Positions 29,954 to 63,654 of a stretch of DNA of 64,000 nucleotides are shown piece after piece. The translations under genes and the position numbers were made by a program. Numbering within the stretch: position 1 is the stretch's first letter; every line of letters starts with the position of its first letter. The notes under the pieces are model-generated. The model worked only from the letters and a program-made list of their open reading frames with translations. It had not been told where the DNA came from and searched no databases. The stretch covers positions 1 through 64,000 of IMG/VR virus record IMGVR_UViG_3300045921_000730. One strand, written 5' to 3'.

Positions 29954-30158
29954 ATGAACTACCGCGTAGCTAAAGACAACGCGGTTTCTGAACTCATCGA
30001 CCCAGCTAACATCACCGGCGCCTCCTTCGGTTTTTGTTTAGAGTCCGACTGCGTTCCACAACCAGACATTTTATTTATGACTACAAATTAATTAGATATC
30101 AATAGGCCAATTCATCCACGCGACTGAAGATCACGTGGTTTTCTCAGCCTTAAGTTTG
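29954..30158 (-). mobile_element. mini-element family A copy 1 (protein-free IS200/IS605-TnpB derivative, ~205 bp)
   Basis: TTTAT | CAAACTTAAGG..CCACGTGA-N7-TCGCGTGG (LE hairpin) ... CCGCGT-N11-ACGCGG-TAGTTCAT (RE); near-identical to six other copies. Confidence 0.9.
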
Positions 30159-30186
30159 ATAAATGTACGCATGTGATTAACATTTT

Positions 30187-31350
30187 TTAATTATACTCTG
30201 TACCACCCTTACGAAGAAGATAATCTTCATTTACACTTTTGAGAATTACACGACCAAGCTCGATGTGTGTTCTTTCTTTGACAGGTTTTACAACAACCCC
30301 TTCTCGGACGTGAAGATTTTTTCCAGAAATTGTTTCTTTGCCAGATGTATATTGAAGCATAACTTCTCTCGAGAAAGGTCCGCGATAAATTAACGGAACA
30401 CTATTGATTCCCATTGCCATACATGCTTGAACCATATCATCATAATCATAATATAATTGTTTACCGCGATATCCAACAACCATATCAAAAGCACGAAAAT
30501 CCCTCTTATCAACATTGTAAGATAGATCTTGAACTCCTTTGCCAATCACTTCACCAAGAATAAACGTTGGAGAATCAATAACACCGCCGTCGTTTTTGAT
30601 CATGTTTACAAAACTTTCAAGCTTTTCAAATATTTGAAGTTCGGTAAGTGTCTTGATATAAACGTTGTCTTGATTTTTTATGTTGTCCTTAAAGCAAAGA
30701 CCTTTACTACCGAGTCCTTTACTAAACACAACAAACTTAGTACGAATATGGTTCTCGTTCCAATCTTTGTTTGGAAGGATTCCAATTGCACAAAAAGTTC
30801 CGTGTAGTTTTTCCGTCATTACGACTTCTTCGCCAAGCCGAAGAACGTCAGGAAAGTTTTTAAAATTTTCAATATCATAAGCAATCGTAAGATCTCTACC
30901 AGCATTGTATACTTCACCTGCAAACGTTGCTGGAATCGGAGGTTCCCATTTTACAATACCAAGAACTTCTGCAATGTCGTCTCCTTCCTTTACAGGAATT
31001 TCGCTCCCATCCTCAAGCATTAGATAAAAGTTCATAGATGAGGTGTGTTTTAATGAAAAAATTAACCCTTCACTTAATACCCCGCGAAGACGGATTTCTT
31101 TAACTCTGTTTCCAGTTTTACTAGCAAGTTTGCCTTTGTGGTTCTCGTAATCCCACAGGTTCAACTGTTTTAAAATCCATTCCGGAACAATTGAATTTGG
31201 AGGAATAAAGACAGCAAGATCACCTGCTTTATATTCACCCTTCTTTACGATGGAACGATAATCACCAATCACAGCTAGCTCAATAGCATCAGCATTAGCA
31301 ATTGGTTCAATGTCGCGAATCTTGCATACTTTTACAGAAAAAGTACTCAT
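30187..31350 (-). CDS. RNA ligase (Rnl2-like, DRB0094-type)
   Basis: PIANADAIELA, RLRGVLSEG, TEKLHGT (KxHG), GEVIGKGVQ, FRAFD, REGVVVK. Confidence 0.9.
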   Translation of the reverse strand: MSTFSVKVCKIRDIEPIANADAIELAVIGDYRSIVKKGEYKAGDLAVFIPPNSIVPEWILKQLNLWDYENHKGKLASKTGNRVKEIRLRGVLSEGLIFSLKHTSSMNFYLMLEDGSEIPVKEGDDIAEVLGIVKWEPPIPATFAGEVYNAGRDLTIAYDIENFKNFPDVLRLGEEVVMTEKLHGTFCAIGILPNKDWNENHIRTKFVVFSKGLGSKGLCFKDNIKNQDNVYIKTLTELQIFEKLESFVNMIKNDGGVIDSPTFILGEVIGKGVQDLSYNVDKRDFRAFDMVVGYRGKQLYYDYDDMVQACMAMGINSVPLIYRGPFSREVMLQYTSGKETISGKNLHVREGVVVKPVKERTHIELGRVILKSVNEDYLLRKGGTEYN

Positions 31351-31438
31351 TTATTCACCCCGCTGTGTTGTGTGTATTTGCGATATCTATTAATTAGATC
31401 AATGTCATTATACTTTAAGTATACAAAAAGATCAATAA

Positions 31439-31900
31439 TTAAATTTTATCGCCATAAATCAAACACATGTCCCACATTGGCGTTCGAGGATTCAACGTTT
31501 GTTTTTCGTTGTTTACTCTATGAGGTTCCCATGCATAGTTTGAACTATCAATTGTCCATCTTTGGATTGACATTGCAAATTTGTTCTTGCAATCAATGCG
31601 CCAAAGTTGAGCAAATATTTTACCTGTTCCTTTAATTGGAACAGCAACATAAGGATCTTCGCGAATCCAAACTGAAATTTTCCCGTTTTCAATTTTTAAA
31701 GTTGATTTTTCATATGAAAATTTGTTACTGAATTGGTCTGCTTTAATGAAAACCCATTCGTTATTTCCAAATGAAGGGGGTTCCATTAACAAATCGTCGT
31801 CTGTTTCAGCACCAAATGCAGCATAGCAACCAAAGATTAAAGCAACTATAATGCACACTAAAATAAATTCTTTCCATTGACGTTTGGCATAGTAATCCAT
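31439..31900 (-). CDS. secreted/periplasmic protein
   Basis: Signal/TM segment plus two Cys. Confidence 0.55.
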   Translation of the reverse strand: MDYYAKRQWKEFILVCIIVALIFGCYAAFGAETDDDLLMEPPSFGNNEWVFIKADQFSNKFSYEKSTLKIENGKISVWIREDPYVAVPIKGTGKIFAQLWRIDCKNKFAMSIQRWTIDSSNYAWEPHRVNNEKQTLNPRTPMWDMCLIYGDKI

Positions 31901-32231
31901 TTTTTAGTTCCTTTTCATTATCTGTTATTTAATTCATCCGTTGTTCTTTAATGCAACGCGGATATTTTGCATTAATATGTTTTTTTACGGCTTGCATTGC
32001 TTCCTTACATTGTGCTTCTGTGTCGTATTCAATCATCAAAGTAATGTTTGTTGGTGGCGAAGCAGAAAGTGATTGATTTGGCGAAACGTGAATAAGACCA
32101 TAATAATTTGTATTTAAAATAAAACTAAGAATCCAAATTTCTTTCACAAAAGATGTCTCCTATTAATTGGAAAAATAAATTATTGCCGAAGTAAAATTCG
32201 GCAATTTTCTGTTAAAATCAAAACAGATATG

Positions 32232-32630
32232 TTAATCATTCTCACGAAAATAATCTTCTAGTCGGAGTAAATGTTTAGATCCTGGAGTTGCATACCACCA
32301 TTCTTTTCCATCAAAAAGATATAAAAACATCCAACTTTTTTTATGAGCAAGCAAGTGATCAAGTTCTTTAAAATTTGTTGGTTTTACAATTTCCCAATCT
32401 TCCTTTTCGTCTCGAAAATAAAAAGTACTTTCTTCAATCAGATCTTCTATTGAAGAAGCATCGCCATATGAAATCAAATTACTAATTTTTTCATATGTGT
32501 TGTAGTGTGCATGCAGAGACTTTCCAACTCCTTCAGGATATCCATCATAATGGCAATAGATGGAGGTATATGTTTGATCTGGATTAATTGTTGCTACAAT
32601 AGCATTAGAAGACATTATTTTTCCTTTCAA
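32232..32630 (-). CDS. hypothetical phage protein
   Basis: SIYCHYDGYPEGVG motif, common in phage ORFs. Confidence 0.65.
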   Translation of the reverse strand: MKGKIMSSNAIVATINPDQTYTSIYCHYDGYPEGVGKSLHAHYNTYEKISNLISYGDASSIEDLIEESTFYFRDEKEDWEIVKPTNFKELDHLLAHKKSWMFLYLFDGKEWWYATPGSKHLLRLEDYFREND

Positions 32631-32727
32631 AGAGTGAACTACGATTCATCTGAATCGCCACTCGTCTAAAGAACATGTGGCTTTTTTTGATGGTATTTGT
32701 AAATAATACACTAACTAACAATCAATG

Positions 32728-33249
32728 TCAACAACTAAATCCTTTGCTTAAATCTGTTCCCAGAAGGATTTTGTTTGCAAGAGAACTTCCCACTTTACCC
32801 AAAACAATTAATTGTTCTATGGAGTACATTTTGTGTGTGAAAGCATTTTCAACTACATCTCTTACGTATGAAAACTGTTGATATATCTTAGTATAAACAT
32901 TGGTAGAAGGTTCAATGTCCTTGCCAAGTTCATAAAAAGCATCTTTGCCTATTGAAATAAAGTATGAAGGCGATAAACCAAAGCGTTGTGCTACAAATGG
33001 CGTGAGTGATGAGATAAGTAAACAAGTATCACCCGTGTCTTTAAGGTGTTTATATTTTTCCAGCGTTGTCTCAGATGGAGCATATTTCATTTCAATTACC
33101 GATTTGTTGTATCCAAGAGATGGATCATCAAACTTATCTGCCGTAAGACGAACTACATAACTCTCAACATCTTCATCAAGAGGATGATTAATTTCTTGCT
33201 CGCTTTCTGTAATTAATTTATAACATGCTTGAAAGTAGTATCTGTTCAT
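32728..33249 (-). CDS. hypothetical protein
   Basis: 173-aa ORF. Confidence 0.6.
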   Translation of the reverse strand: MNRYYFQACYKLITESEQEINHPLDEDVESYVVRLTADKFDDPSLGYNKSVIEMKYAPSETTLEKYKHLKDTGDTCLLISSLTPFVAQRFGLSPSYFISIGKDAFYELGKDIEPSTNVYTKIYQQFSYVRDVVENAFTHKMYSIEQLIVLGKVGSSLANKILLGTDLSKGFSC

Positions 33250-33316
33250 TGCATTTACACCTAATAATTCAAGAAAACTTAGTATTATTTATTGTGTTAA
33301 CCCAAGAAGCCAGCAT

Positions 33317-35979: not shown

Positions 35980-36207
35980 TTAAATCCTTTGAACTACCGC
36001 TTGTCTAAAGAACAAGTAGCTTTCTTTGGTAGTATTTGTAAATTCATTAAGGTCAAAATCTGTTTTTTCAGACACACGAACTCGAACATTGTTCGTTTTA
36101 TTGACAAGATACCCCTGTCGAATTTCTTCAACAGACAAAGAATGTTTTGTAATAAAACGATAATATTTTGATTTTACAAGGAATTTTCGTTCAATTTCTA
36201 CGCCCAT
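35980..36207 (-). pseudogene. truncated CYTH-domain (adenylate cyclase/triphosphatase-like) gene
   Basis: MGVEIERKFLV..IRQGYL..VRVRV, then runs into an RE hairpin (35989-36020) and stops. Confidence 0.7.
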
Positions 36208-36247: not shown

Positions 36248-37477
36248 TTATGTCGTTTTATAAAAATCAATAAAACTAACTAAACGCTTCAACGAGGATG
36301 CCTTAGGCATTTCTACCTTTGGTCTTAATTCCTCTCGACGTCTGTAATCGGCTAATTCGTCCGATGTAAATCCATAAAGATCGTCAAGACCTTTAAGTAA
36401 AATGTTCATTGCAGCATTCAAGTCTCGATCATGTAATGAACCACAAGACGGGCAGGTCCATTCTCTTACCGAGAGTTCCATGCTAGCCATCTTGTGACCA
36501 CAACATGAGCAAAGTTTTGAACTCGGATAGAAGGTGTCAATCTGTTGAAATGACCGACCATACCAGTTGCTCTTGTATGCAACCATAGACACAAAGGATG
36601 ACCAAGAAACATCTTGTATGGACTTAGCCAATCTGCGGTTCTTTACCATGCCCTTAACGTTCAGCTTTTCCATGCAAATGGTATCGTAGTTGTTCACTAA
36701 CCAAGTAGATAGATTATGGTAGAACCAGTTTCGTTGATTGGTTATTTTTTGATGGTTTTTAGCAACCTTGATTCTTTGCTTATTCCAACGATTTGACCCT
36801 TTAACCTTACGACTTAAATGCTGCTGTGCTCTTTTAAGTTTAGATTGGCTTTCTCTAAACCACCTTGGGTTTGAAATCTTCAGGCCATTACTCATGACTA
36901 TCAAGTCTTTCAACCCGAGATCAATACCGATAGAGCGACCGGTATTTGGTTTCAATTCTAGCTCTTCTTCAACTAGAACTGAAACAAAATACTGACCAGA
37001 AGGATTTCTTGAAATTGTCACTGATTTAGGGGCGCCATTGAATTTCCGATCAACCACCATCTTCATTGGAGACATTTTCGTGAGTTTGATTGTTCCAGCA
37101 TCTAAATCAAATGCCTTCATTCCACCCAATGATGCAGCAGGGATCCTAAACGAATCACGTGATTTCCCTTTGCATTTGAACTTCATCCGCCCAAGTTTAA
37201 CGGCTCGTTTCTTGTTGAAGAATTGCTTTTTGGTCTCATCAAAGTCCATTCGCCTTTGTTGCAAAGCATAACTGATGACTTCTTTTAGCCAAGGATATCT
37301 AGGATCGTCTTTCAAGGTCTTTTCAGTGACTGTTTGAGTTGGACCATCCTTAGACCAAGAATTAAAGTTGGCTACCAGTTGATTCCAGACGAATCGGACG
37401 CAACCAAAGTTCTGCAACAAGAATTGCTCTTGCTCTTTTGTTGGATACAGTCGGTATTTGTAAGCTCTTAGAATCAT
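36248..37477 (-). CDS. tnpB: TnpB nuclease (IS607-derived element lacking tnpA)
   Basis: LRAYKYRLYPT; RuvC GIDLG / MEKL / HDRDLNAA; Zn ribbon CSCCG..CPSCG. Start trimmed to MILRAYKY. Confidence 0.95.
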   Translation of the reverse strand: MILRAYKYRLYPTKEQEQFLLQNFGCVRFVWNQLVANFNSWSKDGPTQTVTEKTLKDDPRYPWLKEVISYALQQRRMDFDETKKQFFNKKRAVKLGRMKFKCKGKSRDSFRIPAASLGGMKAFDLDAGTIKLTKMSPMKMVVDRKFNGAPKSVTISRNPSGQYFVSVLVEEELELKPNTGRSIGIDLGLKDLIVMSNGLKISNPRWFRESQSKLKRAQQHLSRKVKGSNRWNKQRIKVAKNHQKITNQRNWFYHNLSTWLVNNYDTICMEKLNVKGMVKNRRLAKSIQDVSWSSFVSMVAYKSNWYGRSFQQIDTFYPSSKLCSCCGHKMASMELSVREWTCPSCGSLHDRDLNAAMNILLKGLDDLYGFTSDELADYRRREELRPKVEMPKASSLKRLVSFIDFYKTT

Positions 37478-37681
37478 TGAACCTGTATAAATAAAATCGT
37501 ATGGGACAGCCCAGTCACCTGTAGCTGAGGTTGGAGTTCCTGCTAAGAACTTCCTAACCATACATCTATTTATGCAAAAAGATATTTGGTCATCGCTTCT
37601 ATATAATTTTTACAGGAATTTTATAGTTGTTGATTGAAATGGAAATTTACATACAATATTGATACTTTAAGGAAGACAACG

Positions 37682-38471: not shown

Positions 38472-38568
38472 ATAATTACCACATTAAAACCTGATGTTGT
38501 TTAGACATGAGGATGAATTGTGGATTCCTCCTTTCTTCAATATATTCACACAAAAAATACCAACTTCT

Positions 38569-38774
38569 ATGAACTACCACGCAGTTAAAGACGACACGGT
38601 TTCCGAACTTATCGACCCAGCTAACATCACTGGTGCCTCCTTCGGTTTTTGTTTAATGTCCGACTGCGTCCCACAACCAGACATTATCATTTATAATCAT
38701 AAACCAATTAGATACCATTGTGTTGATTCGTCCATATGACTGAAGATCATGTGGTTTTCTCAACCTTAAAGACA
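38569..38774 (-). mobile_element. mini-element family A copy 2 (diverged), nested next to a left-end remnant of another TnpB family (38472-38525)
   Basis: Same architecture, TTTAT on the left and TAGTTCAT on the right. Confidence 0.88.
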
Positions 38775-38803
38775 ATAAAACTTCTATTTTTTTATTAGGG
38801 TTT

Positions 38804-40812: not shown

Positions 40813-42240
40813 ATAAACTACCGCGTAGCTAAAGACAACGCGGTTTTCCTGCTCCCCATGTCAACTCCAAAAATGCTTGAAGATCTCTCGATTTTAGCGA
40901 CATGTTTTTGCAAGGACGTTGGGATCACTCCCACTTCGGGCATCTCACCCGAAGGAATAAGTTGATCATAGCAATCTAGCTGACCAAAGTTTTTAATGTT
41001 GATAGCAGCATTTAAGTCTCGATCATGTTCAGTACCACAACCAGGGCAATGCCATTCCCGAGTACCAAGATCAAGTTTCTCAAGTTTGTGCCCACAGCAC
41101 GAACACGTCTTGCTAGATGGAACAAACGGATCAATTTGATGGAATGTCCTACCAGCAGAGGCTGACTTGCAGGAAATCATGGAAACAAGCGTTGACCAAG
41201 CAGTTTCATGGATTTTTCTTGAGAGTTTTCTGTTCTTCAACATTCCAGAAGCATTCAAGTTCTCCATGTAAATGGTATCAAAGTTTTGAATCAAGTAGGA
41301 GCTAATGTTGTGGTAGTACCAATTTCTAATGTTGGCAATCTTCTCGTAGCACTTAGCTACTTTGATTCGTTGAGCTTCTCTGTTCTTACTGCCTTTAGTC
41401 TTTCTTGCTAAAATGCGCTGCTGCTTCTTAAGTGCTAACTTGGCTTTCGCTAGCATTGCTTCAGGATGTTGGAATTTGAGTCCGGTTGAAAGGACGCAGA
41501 GGTCCTTCAAACCAAGATCAATCCCCACTTCTTGCTCGGTAGAAGGTAGAACTGAAACATCTTCTTCTACCAAGATGGAAACAAAAAACTTACCTGACGG
41601 AGTCTTTGACACTGTAGCTGATTTGATGGTTCCTTCGAACTTTCTGTCTAGAGCAATCTTGACATTCTTGATCTTTGGTAACTTGACTGTGCTGTTCTCA
41701 AAATCAACTTTGACATCACGAGTCCTGTAGGACTGATAATTTGATTTAGACTTGAATCTGGGTGCTTGTAGCTTTGGACCTTTTCGTTTTCCGGTGATAG
41801 AATTTAAGAAGTTTTGGTATGCTGTGTGCAGGTCTTCGGCTGCATGTTTCAAACACCAGTCGTCAATTTCTCTGAGCCAAGCAGTTTCTGGTTGTTTCTT
41901 GAGTTGAGTAATCTGTACGTTGATGTCGTAGTTGTTCAGATGTTTTTCTTTGTTGGCAAATCGTTGTTTGTTTTCGTGGAGGTAATGGTTGAAAATCCAA
42001 CGCTTGGCACCAAAGAACTGTGTTAGCAGCGCCTCTTCTGCTTTGTTTGGATACAACCTATACTTGTATGCTCTTAATTCCACTTGACAAACCTTTGTTG
42101 TTCTGTTATAATCTATTTATGCTTTTTCATGTTTCGATATGACAATTTCAGGAGATTTTTCGATGTTGTTTGATCTAGATCAAAAACTTGACCAATTCAT
42201 CCACGCGACTAAAAATCACGTGGTTTCCTTGGTCTAATTG
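40813..42240 (-). mobile_element. tnpB: IS1341-like (tnpB-only) element with family A ends; tnpB CDS 40818..42083
   Basis: LE CCACGTGA-TTTTTAG-TCGCGTGGATGAA and RE CCGCGTTGTCTTTAGCTACGCGGTAG match family A; RuvC D/E/D intact; Zn ribbon present. Confidence 0.93.
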
Positions 42241-42288
42241 ATATGAATTATCAGAACTTCCGATACAAATACCGGAACCGTAGTTTTG

Positions 42289-42361: not shown

Positions 42362-42448
42362 ATAAATAGCTAATTGTTCTTAAGAAGAATTAGCTAATAC
42401 ATTACTATACTACTAAACAAAAGACAACAATCAACGTTCTGTATTAAA

Positions 42449-42654
42449 ATGAACTACCACGAAGCTAAAAACTTTATGGTTTCCGAGCTCATCGACTCGA
42501 CCTAACCGCATCGACGCCTCCTTCGGTTTTTGTTTAATGTCCGACTGCGTCCCACAACCAGACATTTTATTTATGACTACAAATTAATTAGATACCAATG
42601 TGCTGATTCATCCATGTGACTGAAGATCACGTGGTTTTCTCAACCTTAAGTTTG
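42449..42654 (-). mobile_element. mini-element family A copy 3 (most diverged)
   Basis: TTTAT...TAGTTCAT boundaries; compensatory stem changes. Confidence 0.88.
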
Positions 42655-42864
42655 ATAAATAAAAAACGACAACAACATTACTTATGTATACGTTTCAAAT
42701 ATGACAACACCCGAAAAACAGTATCTTAAATTTCCTCGTTTGTGTTTTGTATGTAAAAAAATTGTTCCTTATATACGGCGTGAAAAATATATTTGTAGTG
42801 AACAATGCGAGAAAAAATTTAACAAAAAAATAAAACTAAAAACAACTTTACGTTGTTGTGGTGG

Positions 42865-49722: not shown

Positions 49723-50022
49723 TTATTGGTTTTTACTATTTATACTTTCTTTGATTTCCAACTCCTTGATTAGTTGCTCCGTCTTTCTCTTACTTCTTCG
49801 TTGGCCATAAATCCTAGCACTAAAGGAAGTGATGATAGAGACAAAGTCCTGAATCAAATCTTCCTTTTCGTCTTGAACACAATTCACTACTTCAATTTCA
49901 ATTCCGTTTTTCTTCAGCAAGATTTCTAAGTAGTTGGAGAATGTTTGAACATCAGCGGACGGCTGTCCACCATATGGATGACCAACAAACGTTGTTTCTC
50001 TTAAAAATTTAATAAAATTCAT
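49723..50022 (-). pseudogene. IS607 serine-recombinase TnpA C-terminal fragment fused to an unrelated phage N-terminus
   Basis: NYLEILLKKNGIEIEVVN..EDLIQDFVSIITSFSARIYGQRRSK; HTH and catalytic Ser region absent; N-terminus MNFIKFLRE. Confidence 0.8.
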
Positions 50023-51425
50023 ATAATTCCCGCAAGGAAACCTAATGTTCTTTAGACGTCAGGATGAATTGCGGACCTTTCATTAGTTAAATTGAAAAAT
50101 TCTAACTTATATAAATAATAGTATATAGTAATTCAAATTTATTGTCAAGTGAATCAGCTTAGAGCCTACAAATATCGCCTTTATCCAACCAAAGATCAAG
50201 AGCAAATTCTAGCTCAATTCTTTGGTGCTAAACGTTGGGTCTTCAACCATTTTCTTCACGAAAACAAACAACGATTTGCTAACAAAGAAAAACATCTGAA
50301 CAATTACGACATCAACGTACAGATTACCCAACTCAAGAAACAACCAGAAACTGCATGGCTTCGTGAAATCGATGATTGGTGTTTGAAACATGCAGCCGTA
50401 GATCTGCACACAGCATACCAAAACTTCTTCAAGTCCATAACAGGAAAACGAAAAGGACCAAAGCTACAAGTGCCTAAATACATGTCTAAAGACTCACGTC
50501 AGTCCTATAGGACTAGAGGCGTTAAAGTTGACATTGAGAACAGCACAGTCAAGTTACCTAAGATCAAGAATGTTAAGGTTGTTATTCACCGCAAATTCAT
50601 CGGAACTATCAAATCCGCTACAATCTCTAAGAACCCTGATGGTCAGTATTACATTTCAGTTCTAGTTGAAGAAGATATCAAGTCTTTACCATCAACCAAA
50701 ACCGAAATTGGTATTGATCTTGGAATTAAGGACTTGCTCATATTGAGCAATGGTGTCAAGTTTCAACATCCCAAGAAAATGCTAGAGAAAGCCAATCTAG
50801 CATTGAAGAAGCAGCAAAAGAAACTAGCAAGAAAGACGAAAAGCAGTAATAACCGAGCTAAACAAAGAACTAAGGTAGCTAGAGCGTATGCTAGGATATC
50901 TAGAATCCGCAACAACTACTATCATGAGATTTCGACGTATCTGGTTAGAAACTTCGATGCCATCTACATGGAAAATCTAAACGTGAAGAGCATACTTCAA
51001 AATAGGAAACTTTCACGAGCAATTCATGAAGCATCTTGGTCTACATTAGTCTCTATGATCTCCTACAAGTGCAATTTCTACGCCAGACCTTTCCACCAAA
51101 TAGATCGCTTTGCCGCTTCTTCAAAAACATGCTCATGTTGTGGTCACGAATTAGAGAAACTTGATCTAGGAACCAGAGATTGGACTTGCCCATCATGTGG
51201 TGCCCAGCACGATCGAGATATCAATGCTGCCATCAACATCAAAAACCTTGGTCAAATAGATCTTTATGACCAACTAATTCCTTCGGGTGCAACAACCGAA
51301 GTGGGATCTTCGATCCCAAAGGCTCTAGTGAAATGGACTACTAAAACCGAGAGGTCTCCAAGTGTTTTTGGAGTTAGTCCAGGGACGGAGCAAGCAAGAC
51401 GTTCTTTAGACGTCTAGTAGTTGAC
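50023..51425 (+). mobile_element. tnpB: IS1341-like (tnpB-only) element; tnpB CDS 50149..51417
   Basis: TTCAT | ATAATTCCCGC..CCTAATGTTCTTTAGACGTCAGGATGAA left end; RuvC D/E/D; RE AGACGTTCTTTAGACGTCTAGTAGTTGAC. Confidence 0.93.
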
Positions 51426-51900: not shown

Positions 51901-51904
51901 ATAA

Positions 51905-54620: not shown

Positions 54621-54639
54621 TACAAATCAAAAACGAAAT

Positions 54640-54844
54640 ATGAACTACCGCGTAGCTAAAGACAACGCGGTTTCCGAACTCATCGACCCAGCTAACATCA
54701 CCGGCGCCTCCTTCGGTTTTTGTTTAGAGTCCGACTGCGTTCCACAACCAGACATTTTATTTATGACTACAAATTAATTAGATACCAATAGGCCGATTCA
54801 TCCATGTGATTGAAGATCACGTGGTTTTCTCAGCCTTAAGTTTG
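54640..54844 (-). mobile_element. mini-element family A copy 4
   Basis: TTTAT...TAGTTCAT boundaries; differs from copy 5 at 2 nt. Confidence 0.92.
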
Positions 54845-54851
54845 ATAAAAA

Positions 54852-55421: not shown

Positions 55422-55446
55422 TATATATCTCCTTTATTTTTTAAAA

Positions 55447-55651
55447 ATAAACTACCGCGTAGCTAAAGACAACGCGGTTTCTGAACTCATCGACCCAGCT
55501 AACATCACCGGCGCCTCCTTCGGTTTTTGTTTAGAGTCCGACTGCGTTCCACAACCAGACATTTTATTTATGACTACAAATTAATTAGATACCAATAGGC
55601 CGATTCATCCATGTGATTGAAGATCACGTGGTTTTCTCAGCCTTAAGTTTG
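55447..55651 (-). mobile_element. mini-element family A copy 5
   Basis: TTTAT left boundary; RE variant TAGTTTAT. Confidence 0.92.
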
Positions 55652-55808
55652 ATAAAACAAAATGTCACCGCAAGCACCGCTTGTCTATCCACGTGGGTTT
55701 AAAATGGACATAAAAGTTAACGCCAGTTGTATTTTTGATGAAAATTGTGTAAACTACGGTCATGTAATAAATGTTGTGTTTGATAAATTGAAGAAAGAAG
55801 TGGACAAC

Positions 55809-56576
55809 ATGAATACTGAGATTCAACGAATTGTAGATTTTCGTGGGAACCAGCATTGGTACTTGAATGGAAAACTTCATCGTGAAGATGGACCTGCTGT
55901 TATCAATGCTGATGGTTCTGAAGAATGGTACTTGAATGGAAAACGACATCGGGTAGATGGACCTGCAATTACTTGCAACAGAGGGTCTAAAGATTGGTAC
56001 TTGAATGGAAAACGGCACCGTGAGGATGGGCCTGCAATTATTTTAGCTGATGGGACTCAAATCTGGTATCTAAAAGGAAAACTCCACCGCAAAGATGGAC
56101 CGGCGGTTATCTATCCCGACGGGTCTAAACGTTGGTACAACCACGGAAAATATCATCGCGAAGATGGGCCTGCCTATATTAACAGCGATGGTTCTGAGCA
56201 ATGGTACTTGCACGGGAAACTCCATCGCGAAGATGGGCCTGCAGCTATTCGTAGTGATGGATCTGAAGAATGGTACTCACACGGGGTACTTCATCACGAA
56301 GATGGACCTGCGGTTATTCGCAACGATGGTTCTGAGTATTGGTATATGTATGGAAAACTTCATCGTGAAGATGGACCTGCTGTTATTAATGCTGATGGTT
56401 CTAAATATTGGCATAAACACGGGAAACTTCATTGTGAAAATGGACCTGCTGTTATCAATGCTGATGGGTCTAAGGTTTGGTACCTATATGATGTCAAACT
56501 TTCCTTTAATGAGTGGTTAGAAAGATTGAAATTCAATGAAGAAGAGAAACTATTATTAATTCTGAAGTTTGTATGA
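55809..56576 (+). CDS. 23-aa beta-hairpin (MORN-variant-like 'HREDGPA') repeat protein 1
   Basis: 9 repeats WYLNGKLHREDGPAVI..DGS; start trimmed to MNTEIQRIVD by alignment with the paralogues. Confidence 0.85.
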   Translation: MNTEIQRIVDFRGNQHWYLNGKLHREDGPAVINADGSEEWYLNGKRHRVDGPAITCNRGSKDWYLNGKRHREDGPAIILADGTQIWYLKGKLHRKDGPAVIYPDGSKRWYNHGKYHREDGPAYINSDGSEQWYLHGKLHREDGPAAIRSDGSEEWYSHGVLHHEDGPAVIRNDGSEYWYMYGKLHREDGPAVINADGSKYWHKHGKLHCENGPAVINADGSKVWYLYDVKLSFNEWLERLKFNEEEKLLLILKFV

Positions 56577-56616
56577 ACAACGGTTAACATAACACAACAA
56601 AACAGAAACAAGTGAC

Positions 56617-57384
56617 ATGAATATTGAGATTGAGCCAGTCGTAGATTCTGAAGGAAATCGGTATTGGTACTTGAACGGGGAACTTCGCCGCGAAGATGGA
56701 TCTGTGGTTATGTATAACAACGATTCTGAGTATTGGTATGTGAACGGAAAACTTCACCGCAAAGATGGACCTGTCGTTGTTTATAGTGATGGTTCTGAGA
56801 TCTGGTATTTGGATGGAAAACGACATCGGGTAGATGGACCTGCAATTGTTTATAACGATGGTTCCGAAGAATGGTACTTCAACGGAAAACTTCACCGTGA
56901 AGATGGACCTGCCATTGTTTATAGCAATAGTTCAAAACATTGGTATAAACATGGAAAACGACATCGCACAGATGGGCCTGCAATTGTCTATGTTGATGGC
57001 ACCAAAGAATGGTATCTTAATGGAAAGCGACACCGGCTAGACGGACCTGCTATTATCAGTGCTACTGGTACTGAAGAATGGTACTTGAATGGAGAACGAC
57101 ACCGTGAAGATGGACCTGCGGTTGTGTATAGCGATGGGTCTAAGCGTTGGTATAAACATGGGAGATACCATCGTGAAGATGGACCCGCCATTGTTTATAG
57201 CAATGGTTCTCAATATTGGTACTTGAATGGAAAGCGACACCGGGAAGACGGACCTGCAATTGTCCATGGAGATGGTACTATGTTGTGGTTTTTAAATGAT
57301 ATTAGATTCTCTTTTGAGAAATGGTTAGAAAAAAGCAATTTTAGTGAAGAAGAAAAGCTACTTTTGATTCTGAAGTTTGGATAA
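56617..57384 (+). CDS. HREDGPA repeat protein 2
   Basis: 9 repeats; shared C-cap FEKWLEK..EEEKLLLILKF. Confidence 0.85.
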   Translation: MNIEIEPVVDSEGNRYWYLNGELRREDGSVVMYNNDSEYWYVNGKLHRKDGPVVVYSDGSEIWYLDGKRHRVDGPAIVYNDGSEEWYFNGKLHREDGPAIVYSNSSKHWYKHGKRHRTDGPAIVYVDGTKEWYLNGKRHRLDGPAIISATGTEEWYLNGERHREDGPAVVYSDGSKRWYKHGRYHREDGPAIVYSNGSQYWYLNGKRHREDGPAIVHGDGTMLWFLNDIRFSFEKWLEKSNFSEEEKLLLILKFG

Positions 57385-57423
57385 ACAATGCTTAACACAG
57401 CGCGCCAAAATAAAAACAAGCGA

Positions 57424-57916
57424 CATGAACACTGAACTTAAACGAATTGTAGATTCCCATGGGAACCAACTCTGGTACTTGCACAGTGTGCTTCACCGTG
57501 AAGATGGACCTGCGATTATATATCGTGATGGTTCCGAGTGTTGGTATAAACATGGGAAATACCATCGCGAAGATGGACCTGCTATTGTGTATAGTAATGG
57601 TAATAAGTACTGGTACTTGAACGGAAAACTTCATCGTAAAGATGGACCTGCAATTGTCTATAACAATGGTTCTAACTTGTGGTACTTGAATGGAAAACTC
57701 CATCGTGAAGATGGACCTGCGATTGTGTATAATGATGGTACCAAGTATTGGTACTTGCACGGGAAGCTTCATCGGGAAAATGGACCTGCTATTATTAGTG
57801 CCGACGGTTCTGAAAAATGGTACTTAGGTGGTGTTGAGTTTACTTTTAATGAATGGTTAGAAAAAGTCAAAACCAGCGAAGAAGAGAAACTATTATTAAT
57901 TCTGAAATTTAGATAA
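57424..57916 (+). CDS. HREDGPA repeat protein 3
   Basis: 5 repeats; same N- and C-caps; start trimmed to MNTELKRIVD. Confidence 0.85.
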
Positions 57917-59161: not shown

Positions 59162-59369
59162 AAGGAGAAAAACTATGTTAGGATTTATTACTGGTGTTGT
59201 TGTTGGTGTTGTTGTTGGTGCAGCATTTGCACCATTTTGGATTAAAGTTTTTAATACTGGAAAACAAAAGGTAGAAAAAATTTTTGAAAAGAAAAACTAG
59301 TTGTCTTTTAAAAACAATTTATATATGATTCTGCTGTGTACTAATATACGGCAGAATCAATTTTTTTAT

Positions 59370-59574
59370 CAAACTTAAGGCTGAGAAAACCACGTGATCT
59401 TCAGTCACGTGGATGAATCAGCACATTGGTATCTAATTAATTTGTAGTCATAAATAAAATGTCTGGTTGTGGAACGCAGTCGGACTCTAAACAAAAACCG
59501 AAGGAGGCGCCGGTGATGTTAGCTGGGTCGATGAGTTCGGAAACCGCGTTGTCTTTAGCTACGCGGTAGTTCAT
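59370..59574 (+). mobile_element. mini-element family A copy 6
   Basis: TTTAT | CAAAC... perfect LE hairpin CCACGTGA/TCACGTGG ... TAGTTCAT; follows a terminator hairpin at ~59328-59359. Confidence 0.92.
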
Positions 59575-59613
59575 AAATTTGTGTGATTTAAAAGATAAAG
59601 GTTTAAAATCAAA

Positions 59614-60372: not shown

Positions 60373-60462
60373 CTATATTTGTGACGTATCAAACAAAAAT
60401 TTGTCAAATTTTTAATATGCTTTTGTCATTGCAACAAACACAAACAAATAAGGAAAATTATT

Positions 60463-60789
60463 ATGCCATACATTAAACAACAAAGTCGTGATGTACTCGA
60501 TCCTTGTATTTTAAATTTATTAAATGCACTTCGTGAACTCGAAAGTGATGATGAAAAAAATAGCATGAGTGGAAATTTAAATTATGTTTTCACCAAACTT
60601 CTTGCTACAATTTATGGTTCCGGCAATTACGATGATCGAAGCGATGCGATCAAAACGTTGGAGTGTGCAAAGATTGAATTTTATCGCAAATACATGCAAC
60701 AATATGAAGATCAAAAAGAATTTGAAAATGGATCAGTTGACGTGTGCCTGGAACCAATCATAACAACAACGGGAGTTGTTAAAAAGTGA
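60463..60789 (+). CDS. conserved hypothetical phage protein
   Basis: MPYIKQQSR..GNLNY..LECAKIEFYRK..YEDQK..ENGSV. Confidence 0.7.
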   Translation: MPYIKQQSRDVLDPCILNLLNALRELESDDEKNSMSGNLNYVFTKLLATIYGSGNYDDRSDAIKTLECAKIEFYRKYMQQYEDQKEFENGSVDVCLEPIITTTGVVKK

Positions 60790-61313
60790 AAATCTTTGAA
60801 ATTTTAACACAAAGTAAGGGCACATATGCTGGTGTAAGATATGATGCTGATTCTGTCAATAGACTTAAAAATTTTATTGTACAACACAAAATCCCAAATC
60901 CGATTAAACCACAAAATTTCCATACAACATTACTTTATAGTAGAAAATATTTACCAAACTATAAGCCATGCGGGAAATTACAAACACCATTTTCTGTTAT
61001 CCCAAGCGAATTTGTTATCTGGAAAACCAACGCGTCTGGCGGTGCTGAAAATAACTCACCTCAAACTAATTGTCTTGTACTTAAATGTCAATCGTCCGAT
61101 CTGGTTAACAGACACAATGAATTAATGAATATTCATCAAGCAATATATGATTATCCCGAATATGTGCCACATATAACGCTATCGTACGATGTTGGTGATT
61201 TTGATATATCTACTCTCTCAGCTCCTCACACCATCGGTACTCTTTATGCGGACGAAGAGTATGGTGAGGAATTAAATTTAAACTGGGCAAAAACAAAAGG
61301 AACAAAACAATGA
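60786..61313 (+). CDS. acb1: Acb1 / T4 gp57B-like 2H phosphodiesterase (anti-CBASS)
   Basis: Two 2H motifs FHTTLLYSR and YVPHITLSY; IPNP, VIWKT, LVL, EELNLNW collinear with T4 57B as recalled. GTG start. Confidence 0.85.
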   Translation: MKIFEILTQSKGTYAGVRYDADSVNRLKNFIVQHKIPNPIKPQNFHTTLLYSRKYLPNYKPCGKLQTPFSVIPSEFVIWKTNASGGAENNSPQTNCLVLKCQSSDLVNRHNELMNIHQAIYDYPEYVPHITLSYDVGDFDISTLSAPHTIGTLYADEEYGEELNLNWAKTKGTKQ

Positions 61314-61675
61314 ATGAATTTCCTTATTTATCAATGGTTGCAGCATCTGAAATATCTGAAGAAGATAAACAATCATTTAAACTTTTGTCAGATAAAGCAA
61401 TCAAGTTCGGTTTTGTTGAACGTTTGTCTAACGAAGGAATACTTCAAGCAATTGAAAACATTGCATATGAAATCGCAAAAATGTCTCTTTACACTTTTTT
61501 TAAAAATCCTGATGTTGCAGAATTTACTACGCCGGAAGAATTTTATGAAGATGAAGTGATAGGCGAGGATCTTGAAAAACTTGACGAAATTATTTGGAAC
61601 GTTGCTTTAGCGTCTGGAATCCATCCCGATCTGTTAAATGTTATGATTGATGTAAAGTGCGATGAATTTATATAA
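61310..61675 (+). CDS. hypothetical acidic protein
   Basis: Stop codon lies inside the adjacent element's left end. Confidence 0.6.
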   Translation: MNEFPYLSMVAASEISEEDKQSFKLLSDKAIKFGFVERLSNEGILQAIENIAYEIAKMSLYTFFKNPDVAEFTTPEEFYEDEVIGEDLEKLDEIIWNVALASGIHPDLLNVMIDVKCDEFI

Positions 61676-63005
61676 TCAATTCAAGAAAACCTGATGTTCT
61701 TTAGACGTCAGGATGAATTGAATTTTTTAGTCCTCTTGAGTTTCAATATACCGTTTAATTGTCTCACTATTATATAAATAATATATGACAAAGGTATTTA
61801 TATAAAATGTTCATCAGACAAAATTACAGAATATATCCTAACAAAGAGCAGACCTCAATTCTGAACCAATGGCTTGGTCAGGGTAGATATATTTGGAATT
61901 TCATGTTAACCAAGAACATAGAAACATACCAAGAAACTAAAAAGTTTATTTTTGAAATAGACATGAATAATCTTCTACCTGGTTTGAAACGGCAAGAAGA
62001 AACATCTTGGTTAAAAGAAATACCAGCACAATGTTTACAACAGAAGTGTCAAGATTTGTCACAAGCATTAAAACAGTCTTTTAAGACAAATAAAAGCAAA
62101 AAGGGATTTCCAAAATTTAAGTCAAAAAAGACTGATGAATCTGGCATCAGATTCCCATCATTCAAATTTGAGGGTGACAGGATCAAGTTACCTAAAATGT
62201 CACAAGGAATCAAAATTAAGTTACATCGTGATTTGCTTGGGAAGAAATCATCAGTTACTATATTTCGAGATAAAACCGGAGTCTTCTGGGCATCTATACT
62301 TGTTTCTATTGATGATGTTGTCCCAACGAACACTATTTCTAATGTGGTAGGTATTGATGTCGGATTAAAAGAATTCGCGGTCACATCAGACGCTGAAATA
62401 ATCAAAAACCCGAAATTTCTAAAAAGAACGGCAAAGAAACTAGCAAAAGCTCAAGCAAAACATAGTAGAAAAGAAAAAGGTTCGTCAAACAAAGAAAAAC
62501 AAAGAATTAAAGTTGCAAAAATTTACAGAAAAATAAGCAATCAACGTAAAGATTTTATCAATCAAGTTGCTAGTTCGATAGGCAAGACAAACGACTTGAT
62601 TGTAGTTGAAAATCTCAATGTAAAAGGTATGATGAAAAATCCTAACCTAGCTAAATCTATTTCAGATGTTAGTTGGGGAATGTTTTTATCCGCTTTAAAG
62701 TGGCATTGTAAGAAACGGGGCAAACACTTCGTTGAGATTTCACAATGGTATCCTTCAAGCAAAATGTGTTCATGTTGTGGAAATAAAAAATCAGATTTGT
62801 CCTTGAGCGACAGAACATACGAATGTAAAGAATGTGGTTTCACGATGGATAGAGATTTAAATGCTGCCATTAACATTCTGAAAGAAGGTATCAACCTTTT
62901 CAATACCGTAGGAACTACGGAAATTAACGCCTGTGGAGATATGAGTTCTGAAGTAGGGAACTCAGCCCAGGAAGCTAGTTGTTCTTTAGACAACTAGCAG
63001 TTCAC
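61672..63005 (+). mobile_element. tnpB: IS1341-like (tnpB-only) element; tnpB CDS 61807..62997
   Basis: TTTAT | ATAATC..CCTGATGTTCTTTAGACGTCAGGATGAA left end; GIDVG / VENL / DRDLNAA; RE CTAGTTGTTCTTTAGACAACTAGCAGTTCAC. Confidence 0.93.
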
Positions 63006-63108
63006 AGATAAACTGTTAAAAAAATGATCTGTCGCTTGTCTGAAAAACAAGTGGGATTCGGGTGCATCTTACTAAAGAAATAATCGACGCATTGGTGAGC
63101 AATAACGG

Positions 63109-63139
63109 TTGACTGAATACTTAAAATCGACTATAAATA
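63109..63139 (+). promoter_or_regulatory. sigma70-like promoter for ssrA; its -10 doubles as a T4-type TATAAATA box
   Basis: TTGACT-N17-TATAAA(TA). Confidence 0.75.
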
Positions 63140-63144
63140 TATAT

Positions 63145-63412
63145 GTTAGTGAGTAATCACTGACAATGAGTGTATGAAGCAATCTGTAGACGGGCAAGAC
63201 ACGAGTTCGAATCTCGTCGCCTCCACAAATATTAACTCATGGGGGCGTTATGGAATCGATTGACGGGCGAAGGAAAGTGGACACTTCGAGAGACGACTGA
63301 CGTAATCAGCGTAAAACCTTAAATGCAAACGATGCATTTTATAATGAGGAATTCCGCCTAGCAGCGTAAACCTCAGGGGGAGCGTAGATTCCTTCTTACC
63401 CAACATCTACCG
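63145..63412 (+). ncRNA. ssrA: circularly permuted (two-piece) tmRNA
   Basis: The T-arm and 3' acceptor strand (CACGAGTTCGAATCTCGTCGCCTCCA, to 63225) precede the 5' strand GGGGGCG (63241). G3-U70 pair present. Tag ORF 63325-63369 ANDAFYNEEFRLAA*. Outer ends approximate. Confidence 0.9.
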
Positions 63413-63440
63413 AAAGGACAGTCTTAAGACTGTCCTTTTT
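63413..63440 (+). terminator. intrinsic terminator of ssrA
   Basis: AAAGGACAGTC-TTAA-GACTGTCCTTT followed by a T run. Confidence 0.85.
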
Positions 63441-63448
63441 GTTTTTAT

Positions 63449-63654
63449 CATCTTCAGGGCTGAGAAAACCACGTGATCTTCAGTCGCGTGGATGAATCAG
63501 CCCATTGGTATCTAATTAATTTGTAGTCATAAATAGTAATGTCTGGTTGTGGGACGCAGTCGGACTCTAAACAAAAACCGAAGGAGGCGCCGGTGATGTT
63601 AGCTGGGTCGATGAGTTCGGAAACCGCGTTGTCTTTAGCTACGCGGTAGTTCAT
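63449..63654 (+). mobile_element. mini-element family A copy 7
   Basis: TTTAT...TAGTTCAT boundaries. Confidence 0.92.

What the first reader, a model, noticed from the sequence alone, without database searches (positions are those of the whole stretch)
29954..63654. Seven dispersed protein-free omegaRNA mini-elements (family A): a candidate distributed guide-RNA library for TnpB acting in trans
SEEN: ~205-bp copies at 29954-30158, 38569-38774, 42449-42654, 54640-54844, 55447-55651 (minus) and 59370-59574, 63449-63654 (plus). Every copy is preceded by TTTAT and ends in TAGTT(C/T)AT, with no target-site duplication. Internal order is LE hairpin, TTGGTA-N17-CATAAATA promoter-like box, a ~115-nt structured segment, then the RE hairpin. 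That segment still reads as a vestigial TnpB tail (MSGCGTQSDSKQKPKEAPVMLAGSMSSETALSLATR*), whose last 8 aa equal those of the TnpB at 40818-42083, an element with the same ends. KNOWN: IS200/IS605 elements insert 3' of a short motif, and the TnpB omegaRNA overlaps the tnpB 3' end and takes its guide from the right flank. INFERRED: each copy is a self-contained guide cassette with a different spacer (e.g. AATATTCACATTAAGG, AAATTTGTGTGATTTA, TTTAATACAGAACGTT). These could load a TnpB in trans to cut TTTAT-flanked empty alleles of co-infecting phages, giving protein-free homing or a dispersed CRISPR-like system.
Basis: partly seen in the sequence, partly recalled or inferred. Interest (0 to 1): 0.85.

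Follow-up and report, generated by a model that had tools for sequence, protein, structure and literature searches.

The report
Guide-RNA-only mini transposons in a phage
Seven ~205-bp repeats in this large phage genome are stripped-down IS200/IS605 transposons that have lost the TnpB nuclease gene but keep its whole guide-RNA scaffold, so they probably borrow a TnpB made elsewhere in the same genome; the kind of element is known, but this many copies in a virus is unusual.

Summary
Seven ~205-bp copies lie at the stated coordinates. Each follows TTTAT, ends in TAGTT(C/T)AT and has no target duplication. The window is bases 1-64000 of a 244-kb viral contig that holds three more copies.

Each copy is an internal-deletion derivative of a tnpB-only IS200/IS605 element. 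It keeps a left end with a hairpin, a CATAAATA box and 114 nt equal to the 3' end of a tnpB gene plus the right end.

Those 114 nt are a TnpB omegaRNA scaffold. Across 23 homologues from 17 viral contigs, 98% of cells pair and 17 of 31 pairs show compensatory changes. A pseudoknot covaries in the ISDra2 position.

The likely partner is not the TnpB at 40818-42083, which shares only the last ~40 nt. It is a TnpB at contig 231.8-233.0 kb whose scaffold differs at 3 of 114 positions.

No Y1 TnpA, no empty site and no second target for any guide was found.

That idea is already published. The CRISPR-like library reading has no support here. Expression and cleavage are untested.

The parts
29954..30158 (-). 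Mini-element c1 (subfamily A1). TAM TTTAT at 30159-30163, omegaRNA scaffold 29954-30067, guide-equivalent flank 29938-29953.
   Evidence: (123.6 bits).
38569..38774 (-). Mini-element c2, the oldest copy (82-85% identical to the others). TAM 38775-38779, scaffold 38569-38682, flank 38553-38568.
   Evidence: (114.5 bits).
42449..42654 (-). Mini-element c3 (subfamily A2, with the copy in L007). A 1-nt insertion breaks the vestigial reading frame, but the stems are kept by compensatory changes. TAM 42655-42659, scaffold 42449-42563, flank 42433-42448. It lies 87 nt upstream of tRNA-Asn.
   Evidence: (107.6 bits).
54640..54844 (-). Mini-element c4 (A1). TAM 54845-54849, scaffold 54640-54753, flank 54624-54639. 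It fills the gap between the GH108 lysin-like gene and the TauD-like gene.
   Evidence: 125 bits.
55447..55651 (-). Mini-element c5 (A1, 99% identical to c4). Its right end finishes in TTTAT instead of TTCAT, so the motif next to its own guide target equals the TAM. TAM 55652-55656, scaffold 55447-55560, flank 55431-55446.
   Evidence: (122 bits).
59370..59574 (+). Mini-element c6 (A1), used as the reference copy. It is inserted directly after a terminator-like hairpin plus T-run (59326-59369).
   Evidence: 125 bits.
63449..63654 (+). Mini-element c7. TAM 63444-63448, scaffold 63541-63654, flank 63655-63670. It lies 7 nt downstream of the permuted tmRNA gene.
   Evidence: 123.4 bits.
59365..59369 (+). 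TTTAT target or transposon-adjacent motif of c6. The same motif precedes all seven copies.
59390..59412 (+). Left-end subterminal hairpin of c6 (9-bp stem, 5-nt loop), nested in an outer 5-bp stem (59380-59384 with 59418-59422).
   Evidence: (DNA fold, z = -4.0).
59449..59456 (+). CATAAATA box, 4 nt upstream of the first scaffold base. It fits NATAAATA, the T4-type late-promoter motif.
   Evidence: The sigma-70 scan does not call it.
59461..59574 (+). 114-nt omegaRNA scaffold of c6. It has three stems plus a pseudoknot between the GAA loop (59472-59474) and UUC (59570-59572). It ends at the right-end boundary.
59575..59590 (+). Right flank of c6. This would be the 16-nt guide if the transcript runs on, as in ISDra2.
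   Evidence: Inference from the ISDra2 architecture. The only match in the available sequence is this flank itself.
It has the same hairpin types at both ends and a nearly identical last ~40 nt, but a different scaffold. It appears to sit after TTCAT and ends in TTTAT.
   Evidence: (26.7 bits).
50149..51417 (+). tnpB of a related element with the same type of left-end hairpin (at ~50035-50071), apparently after TTCAT. TATAAATA lies 32 nt upstream of the start. Context only, not a partner.
61807..62997 (+). tnpB of a related element. Left-end hairpin at ~61684-61720, apparently after TTTAT. The right end finishes at ~63005. Context only.
   Evidence: (26.8 bits).

Best explanation
The seven repeats are non-autonomous, PATE-like derivatives of a tnpB-only IS200/IS605 element living in a ~244-288-kb phage genome. 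An internal deletion removed almost all of tnpB. It joined the left end (hairpin plus the tnpB promoter box CATAAATA) to the last 114 nt of the element, which encode the complete TnpB omegaRNA scaffold and the right-end hairpin.

The copies spread by Y1-TnpA-type single-strand 'peel-and-paste' transposition into TTTAT sites. The transposase came from somewhere not yet seen, either the rest of the phage genome or the host.

Each copy is then expected to give a ~130-nt RNA that starts at or next to the first scaffold base and runs ~16 nt into its own right flank. That RNA would be loaded in trans by the cognate TnpB encoded at contig ~231.8-233.0 kb. This gene has the RuvC triad, a scaffold that differs at 3 of 114 positions, and no left end of its own.

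The complex would cut TTTAT+flank, which is the same locus without the element. Such a site arises after excision or sits in a co-replicating genome that lacks the insertion. Recombinational repair would then restore or copy the element.

Shown here: the copies, their ends, their derivation from tnpB, the conserved RNA structure, and the presence of a cognate TnpB.
Inferred: transcription, loading, cleavage, homing, and where TnpA comes from.
For: 1. Copies and ends: seven copies, each after TTTAT, with no target duplication. Subterminal hairpins at both ends.

2. Parent gene: a full-length 406-aa tnpB in the same contig runs into the same 114 nt and right end. A1 copies differ from it at 3-5 of 114 positions. 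It matches ISDra2 TnpB at E = 5e-69. D190, E274 and D356 are conserved in the alignment.

3. RNA structure: 23 scaffold homologues give 31 pairs, 98% of cells paired and 17 pairs with compensatory change. 0 of 500 shuffles reach this, and slid controls pair at 26-41%.

4. Pseudoknot: loop GAA/GAG pairs with 3' UUC/CUC (AU:17, GC:6, no mismatch at the covarying pair). This is the place where ISDra2 pairs -105..-103 with -5..-3 in a 116-nt scaffold.

5. Selection on RNA, not peptide: c3 and the L007 copy have a frameshifted vestigial ORF but keep the stems through compensatory changes.

6. Retention of the whole scaffold: protein-free derivatives with several different deletion junctions occur in other viral contigs. 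All but one truncated relic keep the entire scaffold.

7. Promoter box: [C/T]ATAAATA lies 22-32 nt upstream of the tnpB starts checked and 4-5 nt upstream of the scaffold in six of the seven mini copies (c2 has TATAAATG). TATAAATA occurs 14 times against 5.4 expected. NATAAATA is the late-promoter motif of T4-like cyanophages.

8. Transposase-type recognition: the base 4 nt 5' of the hairpin foot is A where the cleavage motif is TTTAT and G where it is TTCAT. This holds in 7 left ends and 2 right-end types, read by eye.

9. Strand orientation flips together with the GC-skew minimum near 55 kb.

10. Published precedent for PATE omegaRNAs acting in trans.
Against: - No Y1 TnpA in the window or in ~25 kb of other retrieved parts of the contig.
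- No empty site was found, so precise insertion and an existing target are inferred, not seen.
- No expression data. The box is not called by a sigma-70 consensus scan.
- The single-sequence RNA fold is not significantly more stable than shuffles (z = -1.59).
- The 23 sequences are related, and the six pseudoknot covariants may be one clade.
- Some retention of the scaffold could simply reflect recent origin, since A1 copies are 93-99% identical.
- The right end of c5 finishes in TTTAT. An active complex with a TTTAT TAM could then cut c5's own locus. This argues for low activity, a stricter TAM, or a very recent mutation.
- No Rfam family matches.
Confidence: 0.6

Rival explanations
1. The copies are inert selfish relics. 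They are PATE/MITE-like copies mobilised by a TnpA in trans. Their omegaRNA part is carried along only because the deletion that made the founder happened to end there, and the RNA is not made or not used.
For: - A1 copies are 93-99% identical, so there has been little time for decay.
- No expression evidence, and the sigma-70 scan is negative.
- c5 tolerates a TAM-like right end.
- L001b in the same genome is visibly decaying, and L178 in another contig is truncated.
- c1, c5 and L001b carry a change that weakens the base of stem 2.
Against: - Older and diverged copies (c2, c3, L007) keep all stems. c3 and L007 do so through compensatory changes while the reading frame is lost.
- Derivatives with different junctions in other viral contigs keep the whole 114 nt. 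From my own recollection of IS608, not checked here, the hairpin-proximal ~40-50 nt are enough for TnpA.
- An intact cognate tnpB is kept in the genome.
Confidence: 0.22
2. The phage uses a resident TnpB plus the dispersed cassettes as a weapon or gene drive against related co-infecting phages. Each cassette would cut the allele lacking it and drag neighbouring markers along. This would be an RNA-guided analogue of T4 seg/mob marker exclusion and the closest version of the reader's 'distributed guide library'.
For: - The cognate tnpB has no left end of its own, so it looks like a fixed phage gene.
- There are at least 9 cassettes in one genome, clustered in contig 229-244 kb plus 29-64 kb.
- The box matches a phage late-promoter motif.
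- A near-identical cassette sits in an unrelated viral contig from a sibling sample (L007).
- Orthologous cassettes are kept at the same locus in diverged contigs (L176, L183, L184).
- The concept is listed as 'non-restorative homing' in a 2026 review.
Against: - No genome lacking any cassette was found, so there is no known victim.
- Guides match only their own flanks.
- Every observation is equally explained by ordinary transposon self-maintenance.
- The targets are AT-rich intergenic leaders with no obvious value as weapon targets.
Confidence: 0.13
3. The elements matter mainly as mobile regulatory modules. They would act as an outward-reading promoter for the downstream gene and as a terminator-like hairpin against antisense transcription.
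For: - All copies are intergenic, co-oriented with the flanking genes and 19-97 nt upstream of the next gene or tRNA.
- The box points towards that gene.
- On the opposite strand the left-end hairpin followed by TTTTCT is called terminator-like.
Against: - This does not explain conservation and covariation of the 114-nt scaffold or the pseudoknot.
- The co-orientation is also what the strand bias of IS200/IS605 insertion predicts.
- The consensus scans are weak evidence.
Confidence: 0.05

Closest known systems
PATEs (palindrome-associated transposable elements): protein-free IS200/IS605 derivatives, described in Haloquadratum and as PATE-like elements in Geobacillus stearothermophilus (Meers et al. 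2023, PMC10055086)
   Same: No coding capacity. Left and right ends with subterminal hairpins. Insertion next to a short motif without duplication. They need TnpA in trans. The paper states that PATEs often encode omegaRNAs that would need a TnpB from another element.
   Different: These copies are in a virus, with at least 9 in one genome. A phage-type NATAAATA box sits 4-5 nt from the scaffold start. The cognate tnpB has lost its own left end. No TnpA has been seen so far.
ISDra2 TnpB-omegaRNA (Deinococcus radiodurans; PDB 8H1J, 8EXA)
   Same: The cognate protein is a clear homologue (E = 5e-69). The scaffolds are 114 nt here and 116 nt there. The scaffold overlaps the tnpB 3' end and finishes at the right-end boundary. 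A pseudoknot joins the last few nucleotides to a 5' stem-loop. The guide comes from the flank.
   Different: The TAM would be TTTAT rather than TTGAT. The RNA is uncoupled from the gene. There is no sequence similarity between the RNAs. Nothing here has been tested biochemically.
Free-standing homing endonuclease genes of T4-like phages (seg, mob) and marker exclusion
   Same: Under the homing reading these are phage-borne selfish cassettes in intergenic positions. They would cut the allele that lacks them in a co-infecting genome and spread by repair (review).
   Different: Recognition would be by RNA guide plus TAM, not by protein. One nuclease gene would serve many loci. There is no experimental or population evidence here.
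Classical MITEs
   Same: Short, multi-copy, non-coding deletion derivatives of an insertion sequence.
   Different: There are no terminal inverted repeats and no target-site duplication. The ends are asymmetric hairpins, and insertion is strand- and motif-specific.

Membership tests
IS200/IS605 family, non-autonomous (PATE-like) derivative | Insertion immediately 3' of a fixed 4-5-nt motif, with no target-site duplication and no terminal inverted repeats | tested here: met
   TTTAT precedes 7 of 7 window copies, and also the L004 and L007 copies. L001b follows ATTAT. The flanks are unrelated.
IS200/IS605 family, non-autonomous (PATE-like) derivative | Imperfect subterminal hairpins at the left end and the right end | tested here: met
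   DNA folds give z = -4.0 for the left end and z = -3.75 for the right end. The same hairpin types occur in the tnpB elements at 40813-42242, ~50035 and ~61684.
IS200/IS605 family, non-autonomous (PATE-like) derivative | The cleavage motif is read by a short internal DNA guide just 5' of the hairpin foot (IS608 model) | tested here: inconclusive
   The base 4 nt before the hairpin is A with TTTAT and G with TTCAT in 7 left ends and 2 right-end types. The sample is small, was read by eye, and the exact pairing register was not resolved.
IS200/IS605 family, non-autonomous (PATE-like) derivative | A Y1 (HUH) TnpA is available to mobilise it | tested here: inconclusive
   None found among 45 ORFs scanned against Pfam. 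None found in six-frame translations of the window plus ~25 kb of the same contig with an HMM built from 7 TnpA sequences. About 155-200 kb of the genome and the host were not examined.
IS200/IS605 family, non-autonomous (PATE-like) derivative | Orientation bias relative to replication (active strand on the lagging-strand template) | tested here: inconclusive
   Five minus-strand copies lie left of ~55.6 kb and two plus-strand copies lie right of it. This coincides with the cumulative GC-skew minimum and the gene-strand switch. Replication and transcription direction cannot be separated here.
TnpB omegaRNA (OMEGA guide RNA) | Encoded by the 3' end of tnpB plus the right end, finishing at the transposon boundary so that the flank supplies the guide | tested here: met
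   The 114 nt equal the end of a full-length tnpB in the same contig, with 3-5 differences in A1 copies. The same holds for 6 full-length relatives in other viral contigs.
TnpB omegaRNA (OMEGA guide RNA) | Conserved secondary structure supported by covariation | tested here: met
   98% of cells paired, 17 of 31 pairs with compensatory change, 0 of 500 shuffles as high, slid controls 26-41%. Caveats: the sequences are related, and the single-sequence fold has z = -1.59.
TnpB omegaRNA (OMEGA guide RNA) | Pseudoknot between the last nucleotides of the scaffold and a 5' stem-loop, as in ISDra2 and Cas12 guides | tested here: met
   Alignment columns 12-14 pair with columns 111-113 in 98.6% of cells. 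One pair covaries (AU:17, GC:6). The position corresponds to the ISDra2 pseudoknot. The six covariants may be one lineage.
TnpB omegaRNA (OMEGA guide RNA) | A cognate TnpB with an intact RuvC triad in the same genome | tested here: met
   A 406-aa TnpB at contig ~231,808-233,025. ISDra2 homologue at E = 5e-69, with D190, E274 and D356 conserved.
TnpB omegaRNA (OMEGA guide RNA) | Transcribed, bound by TnpB, and directing TAM-dependent cleavage | not testable with these tools
   There is only a promoter-like NATAAATA box at the right distance.
TnpB omegaRNA (OMEGA guide RNA) | Match to a curated RNA family | tested here: not met
   No Rfam 15 family reaches threshold. The best hits are chance-level, at E = 0.019 and above.
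CRISPR-like guide library | Guides that match sequences other than the element's own insertion site | tested here: not met
   Each 16-nt flank has a single perfect match, which is itself. All other hits in the window and 6 loci carry 2-3 mismatches and none lies after TTTAT (one lies after TTTAT with 3 mismatches). Host and competitor genomes are not available.

The most novel reading that the evidence does not exclude
A large T4-like-related phage has domesticated one TnpB, which has been stripped of its own transposon left end. It serves at least nine dispersed, self-promoted omegaRNA cassettes. Together these would act as a multi-locus RNA-guided homing or marker-exclusion system that is expressed late in infection and cuts co-infecting relatives lacking a cassette. 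Similar promoter-plus-scaffold cassettes, some with no left end at all, recur in at least ten other viral contigs. That would make this a general phage strategy and a natural intermediate between a fixed-guide transposon nuclease and a multi-guide system.
Probability: 0.2. Interest if true: 0.8.

Novelty: new member of a known kind. Interest (0 to 1): 0.48.

Why it matters
If the cassettes are expressed and used, this genome is a natural case of one TnpB served by many separately encoded guides. That is the step that separates a transposon nuclease with one fixed guide from a multi-guide system such as CRISPR-Cas12.

It would also extend RNA-guided homing from bacterial chromosomes to competition between phages.

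In practical terms it offers a defined trio to test in trans: the TnpB at contig ~232 kb, a 114-nt scaffold, and a TTTAT TAM.

If the cassettes are not used, this is simply a well-preserved burst of PATE-like elements in a phage. That would be useful for annotation, because these repeats break assemblies, but otherwise ordinary.

Tried and rejected
- Rfam, at gathering thresholds over the window and at E <= 10 on c6: no omegaRNA family. A weak hit to a S. pyogenes sRNA (E = 0.11) was not pursued.
I replaced that reading with the NATAAATA late-promoter reading.
- Partner TnpB at 40818-42083: rejected in favour of the contig-232-kb gene.
- Empty sites. Exact-protein look-ups of three flanking genes found only the same genome or contigs that break in the repeats. 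An empty-site pattern for c6 gave 0 hits in metagenome contigs, and so did the family pattern, so that collection evidently lacks these samples. Genome contigs gave 0 hits.
- Cultured phages: no DNA match to the window or to the element.
- TnpA: not found. I did not scan IMG/VR with a TnpA profile, because only the best 80 loci are returned and the source contig would probably be lost among them.
- Second-site targets of the guides: none.
- Thermodynamic stability of the scaffold alone: not significant.
- The Altae-Tran 2021 paper could not be opened, so I do not rely on it.

Full report
OBSERVATION. They align end to end. Two internal motifs each hit seven times, with none expected in shuffles. 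A profile HMM and a covariance model both recover exactly these seven full copies in the window. All are preceded by TTTAT. Six end in TAGTTCAT and c5 ends in TAGTTTAT. The flanks share nothing, so there is no target-site duplication.

SOURCE. The window is bases 1-64000 of IMGVR_UViG_3300045921_000730, a 244,293-bp viral contig. The same genome was assembled as a 288-kb contig in JGI sample 3300045911, 100% identical over 6.5 kb. Logan contigs from SRR30649435 stop inside the repeats. The repeats are therefore real and not an assembly product. The gene content is phage-like: peptide deformylase, Acb1, HSP20, dCTP deaminase, HNH, RNA ligase and NAD ligase. One protein has its relatives mostly in T4-like cyanophages, at 33-36% identity. 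The host is unknown.

ANATOMY. I use c6 as the reference copy.
- TTTAT at 59365-59369.
- A left end with a 9-bp hairpin (59390-59412) nested in an outer stem.
- CATAAATA at 59449-59456.
- Four bases later, 114 nt (59461-59574) that run to the right-end boundary.

Outside the window the same contig holds a full-length 406-aa tnpB at ~231,808-233,025. Its last codons and right end are these same 114 nt, and A1 copies differ from it at 3-5 positions. The mini-element is therefore an internal-deletion derivative: left end plus promoter region joined to the scaffold-encoding tail. The ATG of the 'vestigial tail' is an internal Met codon of that parent gene.

Three further copies lie in the same contig, outside the window. 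One is full (L004) and one is decaying (L001b); the third is the parent gene's own tail. One more copy (L007, 92% identical) sits in a different viral contig that shares nothing else at the DNA level.

IS THE 114-NT SEGMENT AN omegaRNA? A 22-nt motif from it finds 15 further viral contigs. They carry six full-length tnpB genes and about nine protein-free derivatives.

An alignment of 23 distinct scaffolds gives a three-stem structure:
- 98% of cells are paired.
- 17 of 31 pairs show compensatory change.
- 0 of 500 shuffles reach this, and slid controls pair at 26-41%.

The loop of stem 1 (GAA or GAG) pairs with the UUC or CUC just before the right-end boundary. That pair covaries perfectly (AU:17, GC:6). 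In ISDra2 the functional scaffold is 116 nt, and a pseudoknot joins -5..-3 to -105..-103 (Nakagawa et al. 2023). The geometry here is the same, and the parent protein matches ISDra2 TnpB at E = 5e-69.

In c3 and the L007 copy a 1-nt insertion destroys the reading frame, yet the inner stem is kept by compensatory changes. Constraint is therefore on the RNA and not on the peptide.

Caveats:
- The sequences are related, and the six pseudoknot covariants may be one clade.
- The fold of a single copy is not more stable than shuffles (z = -1.59).
- Stem 3 is also the DNA hairpin that TnpA would read.
- No Rfam family matches.

WHICH TnpB? The window encodes five TnpBs, and all keep the RuvC residues. 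That explains the identical final 8 residues. Its scaffold region is different, however. It scores 26.7 bits on the model, against 107-125 bits for the mini copies, and the protein is 37% identical to the parent. Its element appears to sit after TTCAT and to end in TTTAT, the reverse of the mini copies. If TTCAT is its TAM, loading mini RNAs would direct it to the occupied sites, which end in TTCAT followed by the guide target. The contig-232-kb TnpB is the plausible partner.

That gene has no left-end hairpin on its own strand. Upstream of it lies only its TATAAATA box, followed by L001b in the opposite orientation. It therefore looks immobile.

HOW THEY MOVED. The ends are those of IS200/IS605 'peel-and-paste' elements. 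The base 4 nt before each hairpin is A where the cleavage motif is TTTAT and G where it is TTCAT, in seven left ends and two right-end types. This fits recognition of the motif by an internal DNA guide, as stated for this family. The sample is small, I read it by eye, and I could not fix the pairing register.

Copies left of ~55.6 kb are on the minus strand and those to the right are on the plus strand. This matches the cumulative GC-skew minimum and the switch in gene strand. From my own knowledge, this family inserts with its active strand on the lagging-strand template. The pattern is consistent with that, but transcription direction is confounded with it.

No Y1 TnpA was found in the window or in ~25 kb of other retrieved parts. 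The rest of the genome and the host are unexamined.

TTTAT occurs about 460 times in the window. All seven insertions are intergenic. One sits directly after a terminator hairpin and one sits 7 nt after the tmRNA gene.

PROMOTER. A sigma-70 consensus scan does not call TTGGTA-N17-CATAAATA. There is comparative support for a different reading.
- TATAAATA occurs 14 times against 5.4 expected.
- [C/T]ATAAATA lies 26-32 nt upstream of four of the window tnpB starts and 23 nt upstream of the parent tnpB. It also lies 22-45 nt upstream of several other genes.
- In six of the seven mini copies the same box sits 4-5 nt before the first scaffold base (c2 has TATAAATG).
- In other viral contigs an ATAAAT-type box lies 5-7 nt before the scaffold. 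This includes cassettes that have no left end at all and follow a terminator.
- NATAAATA is the late-promoter motif of T4-like cyanophages (Clokie et al. 2010).

A primary transcript starting at the scaffold 5' end is thus a reasonable inference, but it has not been shown.

WHAT THE GUIDES WOULD HIT. Each 16-nt flank matches only itself in the window and six loci. Next to that target stands the element's own TTCAT rather than TTTAT, so occupied sites would be spared and only the element-free allele would be cut. This is the standard logic of TnpB homing. Nothing points to targets elsewhere, so the 'CRISPR-like' reading has no support.

c5 is the exception. Its right end reads TTTAT, so an active complex might cut c5's own locus. 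I could find no empty allele for any copy.

COMPARISON AND NOVELTY. Protein-free IS200/IS605 derivatives (PATEs) are known. Meers et al. 2023 state that PATEs often encode omegaRNAs that would need a TnpB from another element. A 2026 review lists homing into co-infecting phages as a category. TnpB genes are common in cultured phages, with 427 records matching.

What is new here is the instance:
- at least nine cassettes and six tnpB genes in one large phage;
- a phage-type promoter box abutting the scaffold;
- a parent tnpB without its own left end;
- recurrence of such cassettes across many viral contigs.

I file it as a new member of a known kind.

MECHANISM AND CONFIDENCE. I am about 90% sure that these are omegaRNA-bearing PATE-like elements. 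I am about 60% sure of the whole chain: transcription, trans-loading by the contig-232-kb TnpB, cleavage of TTTAT+flank, and retention or homing. The main rival is that they are unexpressed relics (~0.2). A phage-versus-phage drive is possible but unsupported (~0.13 as the main function).

Noticed in passing
window 63118-63441 (+): A permuted (two-piece) tmRNA gene inside a phage genome (121 and 108 bits against two Rfam models). ARAGORN did not report it. Mini-element c7 starts 7 nt after it.
   Followed up: partly
window 36248-37561 (-), 48470-49711 (-), 50149-51417 (+), 61807-62997 (+), with 40818-42083 (-): Five full-length tnpB genes in 64 kb, all with the RuvC residues. The one at 48470 has an upstream 99-aa ORF (49723-50022) that looks by eye like the C-terminus of a serine recombinase (IS607-like). 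Pfam did not confirm this.
   Followed up: partly
window ~24120-24175 (+), ~32640-32700 (-), ~35990-36045 (-): Three copies of a ~55-nt right-end-like module: a hairpin followed by GGTAGTTCA. One copy lies ~200 nt downstream of the tnpB at 36248 and is probably its right end. The other two are solo and may be remnants of a second mini-element family.
   Followed up: partly
window 55855-57825 (+): Three consecutive ORFs (55662-56576, 56617-57384, 57377-57916) are built from diverged 69-bp (23-aa) tandem repeats. By eye they resemble MORN-type repeats. G+C and GC skew are locally raised.
   Followed up: no
L129/L001 (contig ~231.8-233.2 kb): The parent-type tnpB has no left-end hairpin of its own. 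A decaying mini copy (L001b, after ATTAT) lies head-to-head ~100 nt upstream of its start.
   Followed up: partly
L181 416-521, L188 108-218, L189, L175 2601-2714, L179 5327-5436: In other viral contigs the same scaffold occurs with no recognisable left-end hairpin. It sits directly after a terminator-like hairpin and an ATAAAT-type box, so these look like stand-alone, immobile omegaRNA genes.
   Followed up: partly
L130 2380-3760 (IMGVR_UViG_3300010158_000027, 281 kb): Another very large viral contig carries a complete relative: a TnpB 50% identical to the parent, with a covarying scaffold. It is also inserted after TTTAT at the end of a terminator.
   Followed up: partly
window 1-1163 versus L005 1920-3082 (contig ~64.7-65.8 kb): 88% DNA identity between the first gene of the window (81-1121, 346 aa) and a region just beyond the window end. 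This is a diverged duplicate gene.
   Followed up: no
window 60786-61313 (+): The ORF matches Pfam Acb1 (an anti-CBASS nuclease), so the phage carries a counter-defence gene close to the cassettes.
   Followed up: no
window 54802-54824, 55609-55631, 59390-59412 (strand opposite to each element): Read on the antisense strand, the left-end hairpin followed by TTTTCT is called terminator-like by the consensus scan.
   Followed up: no
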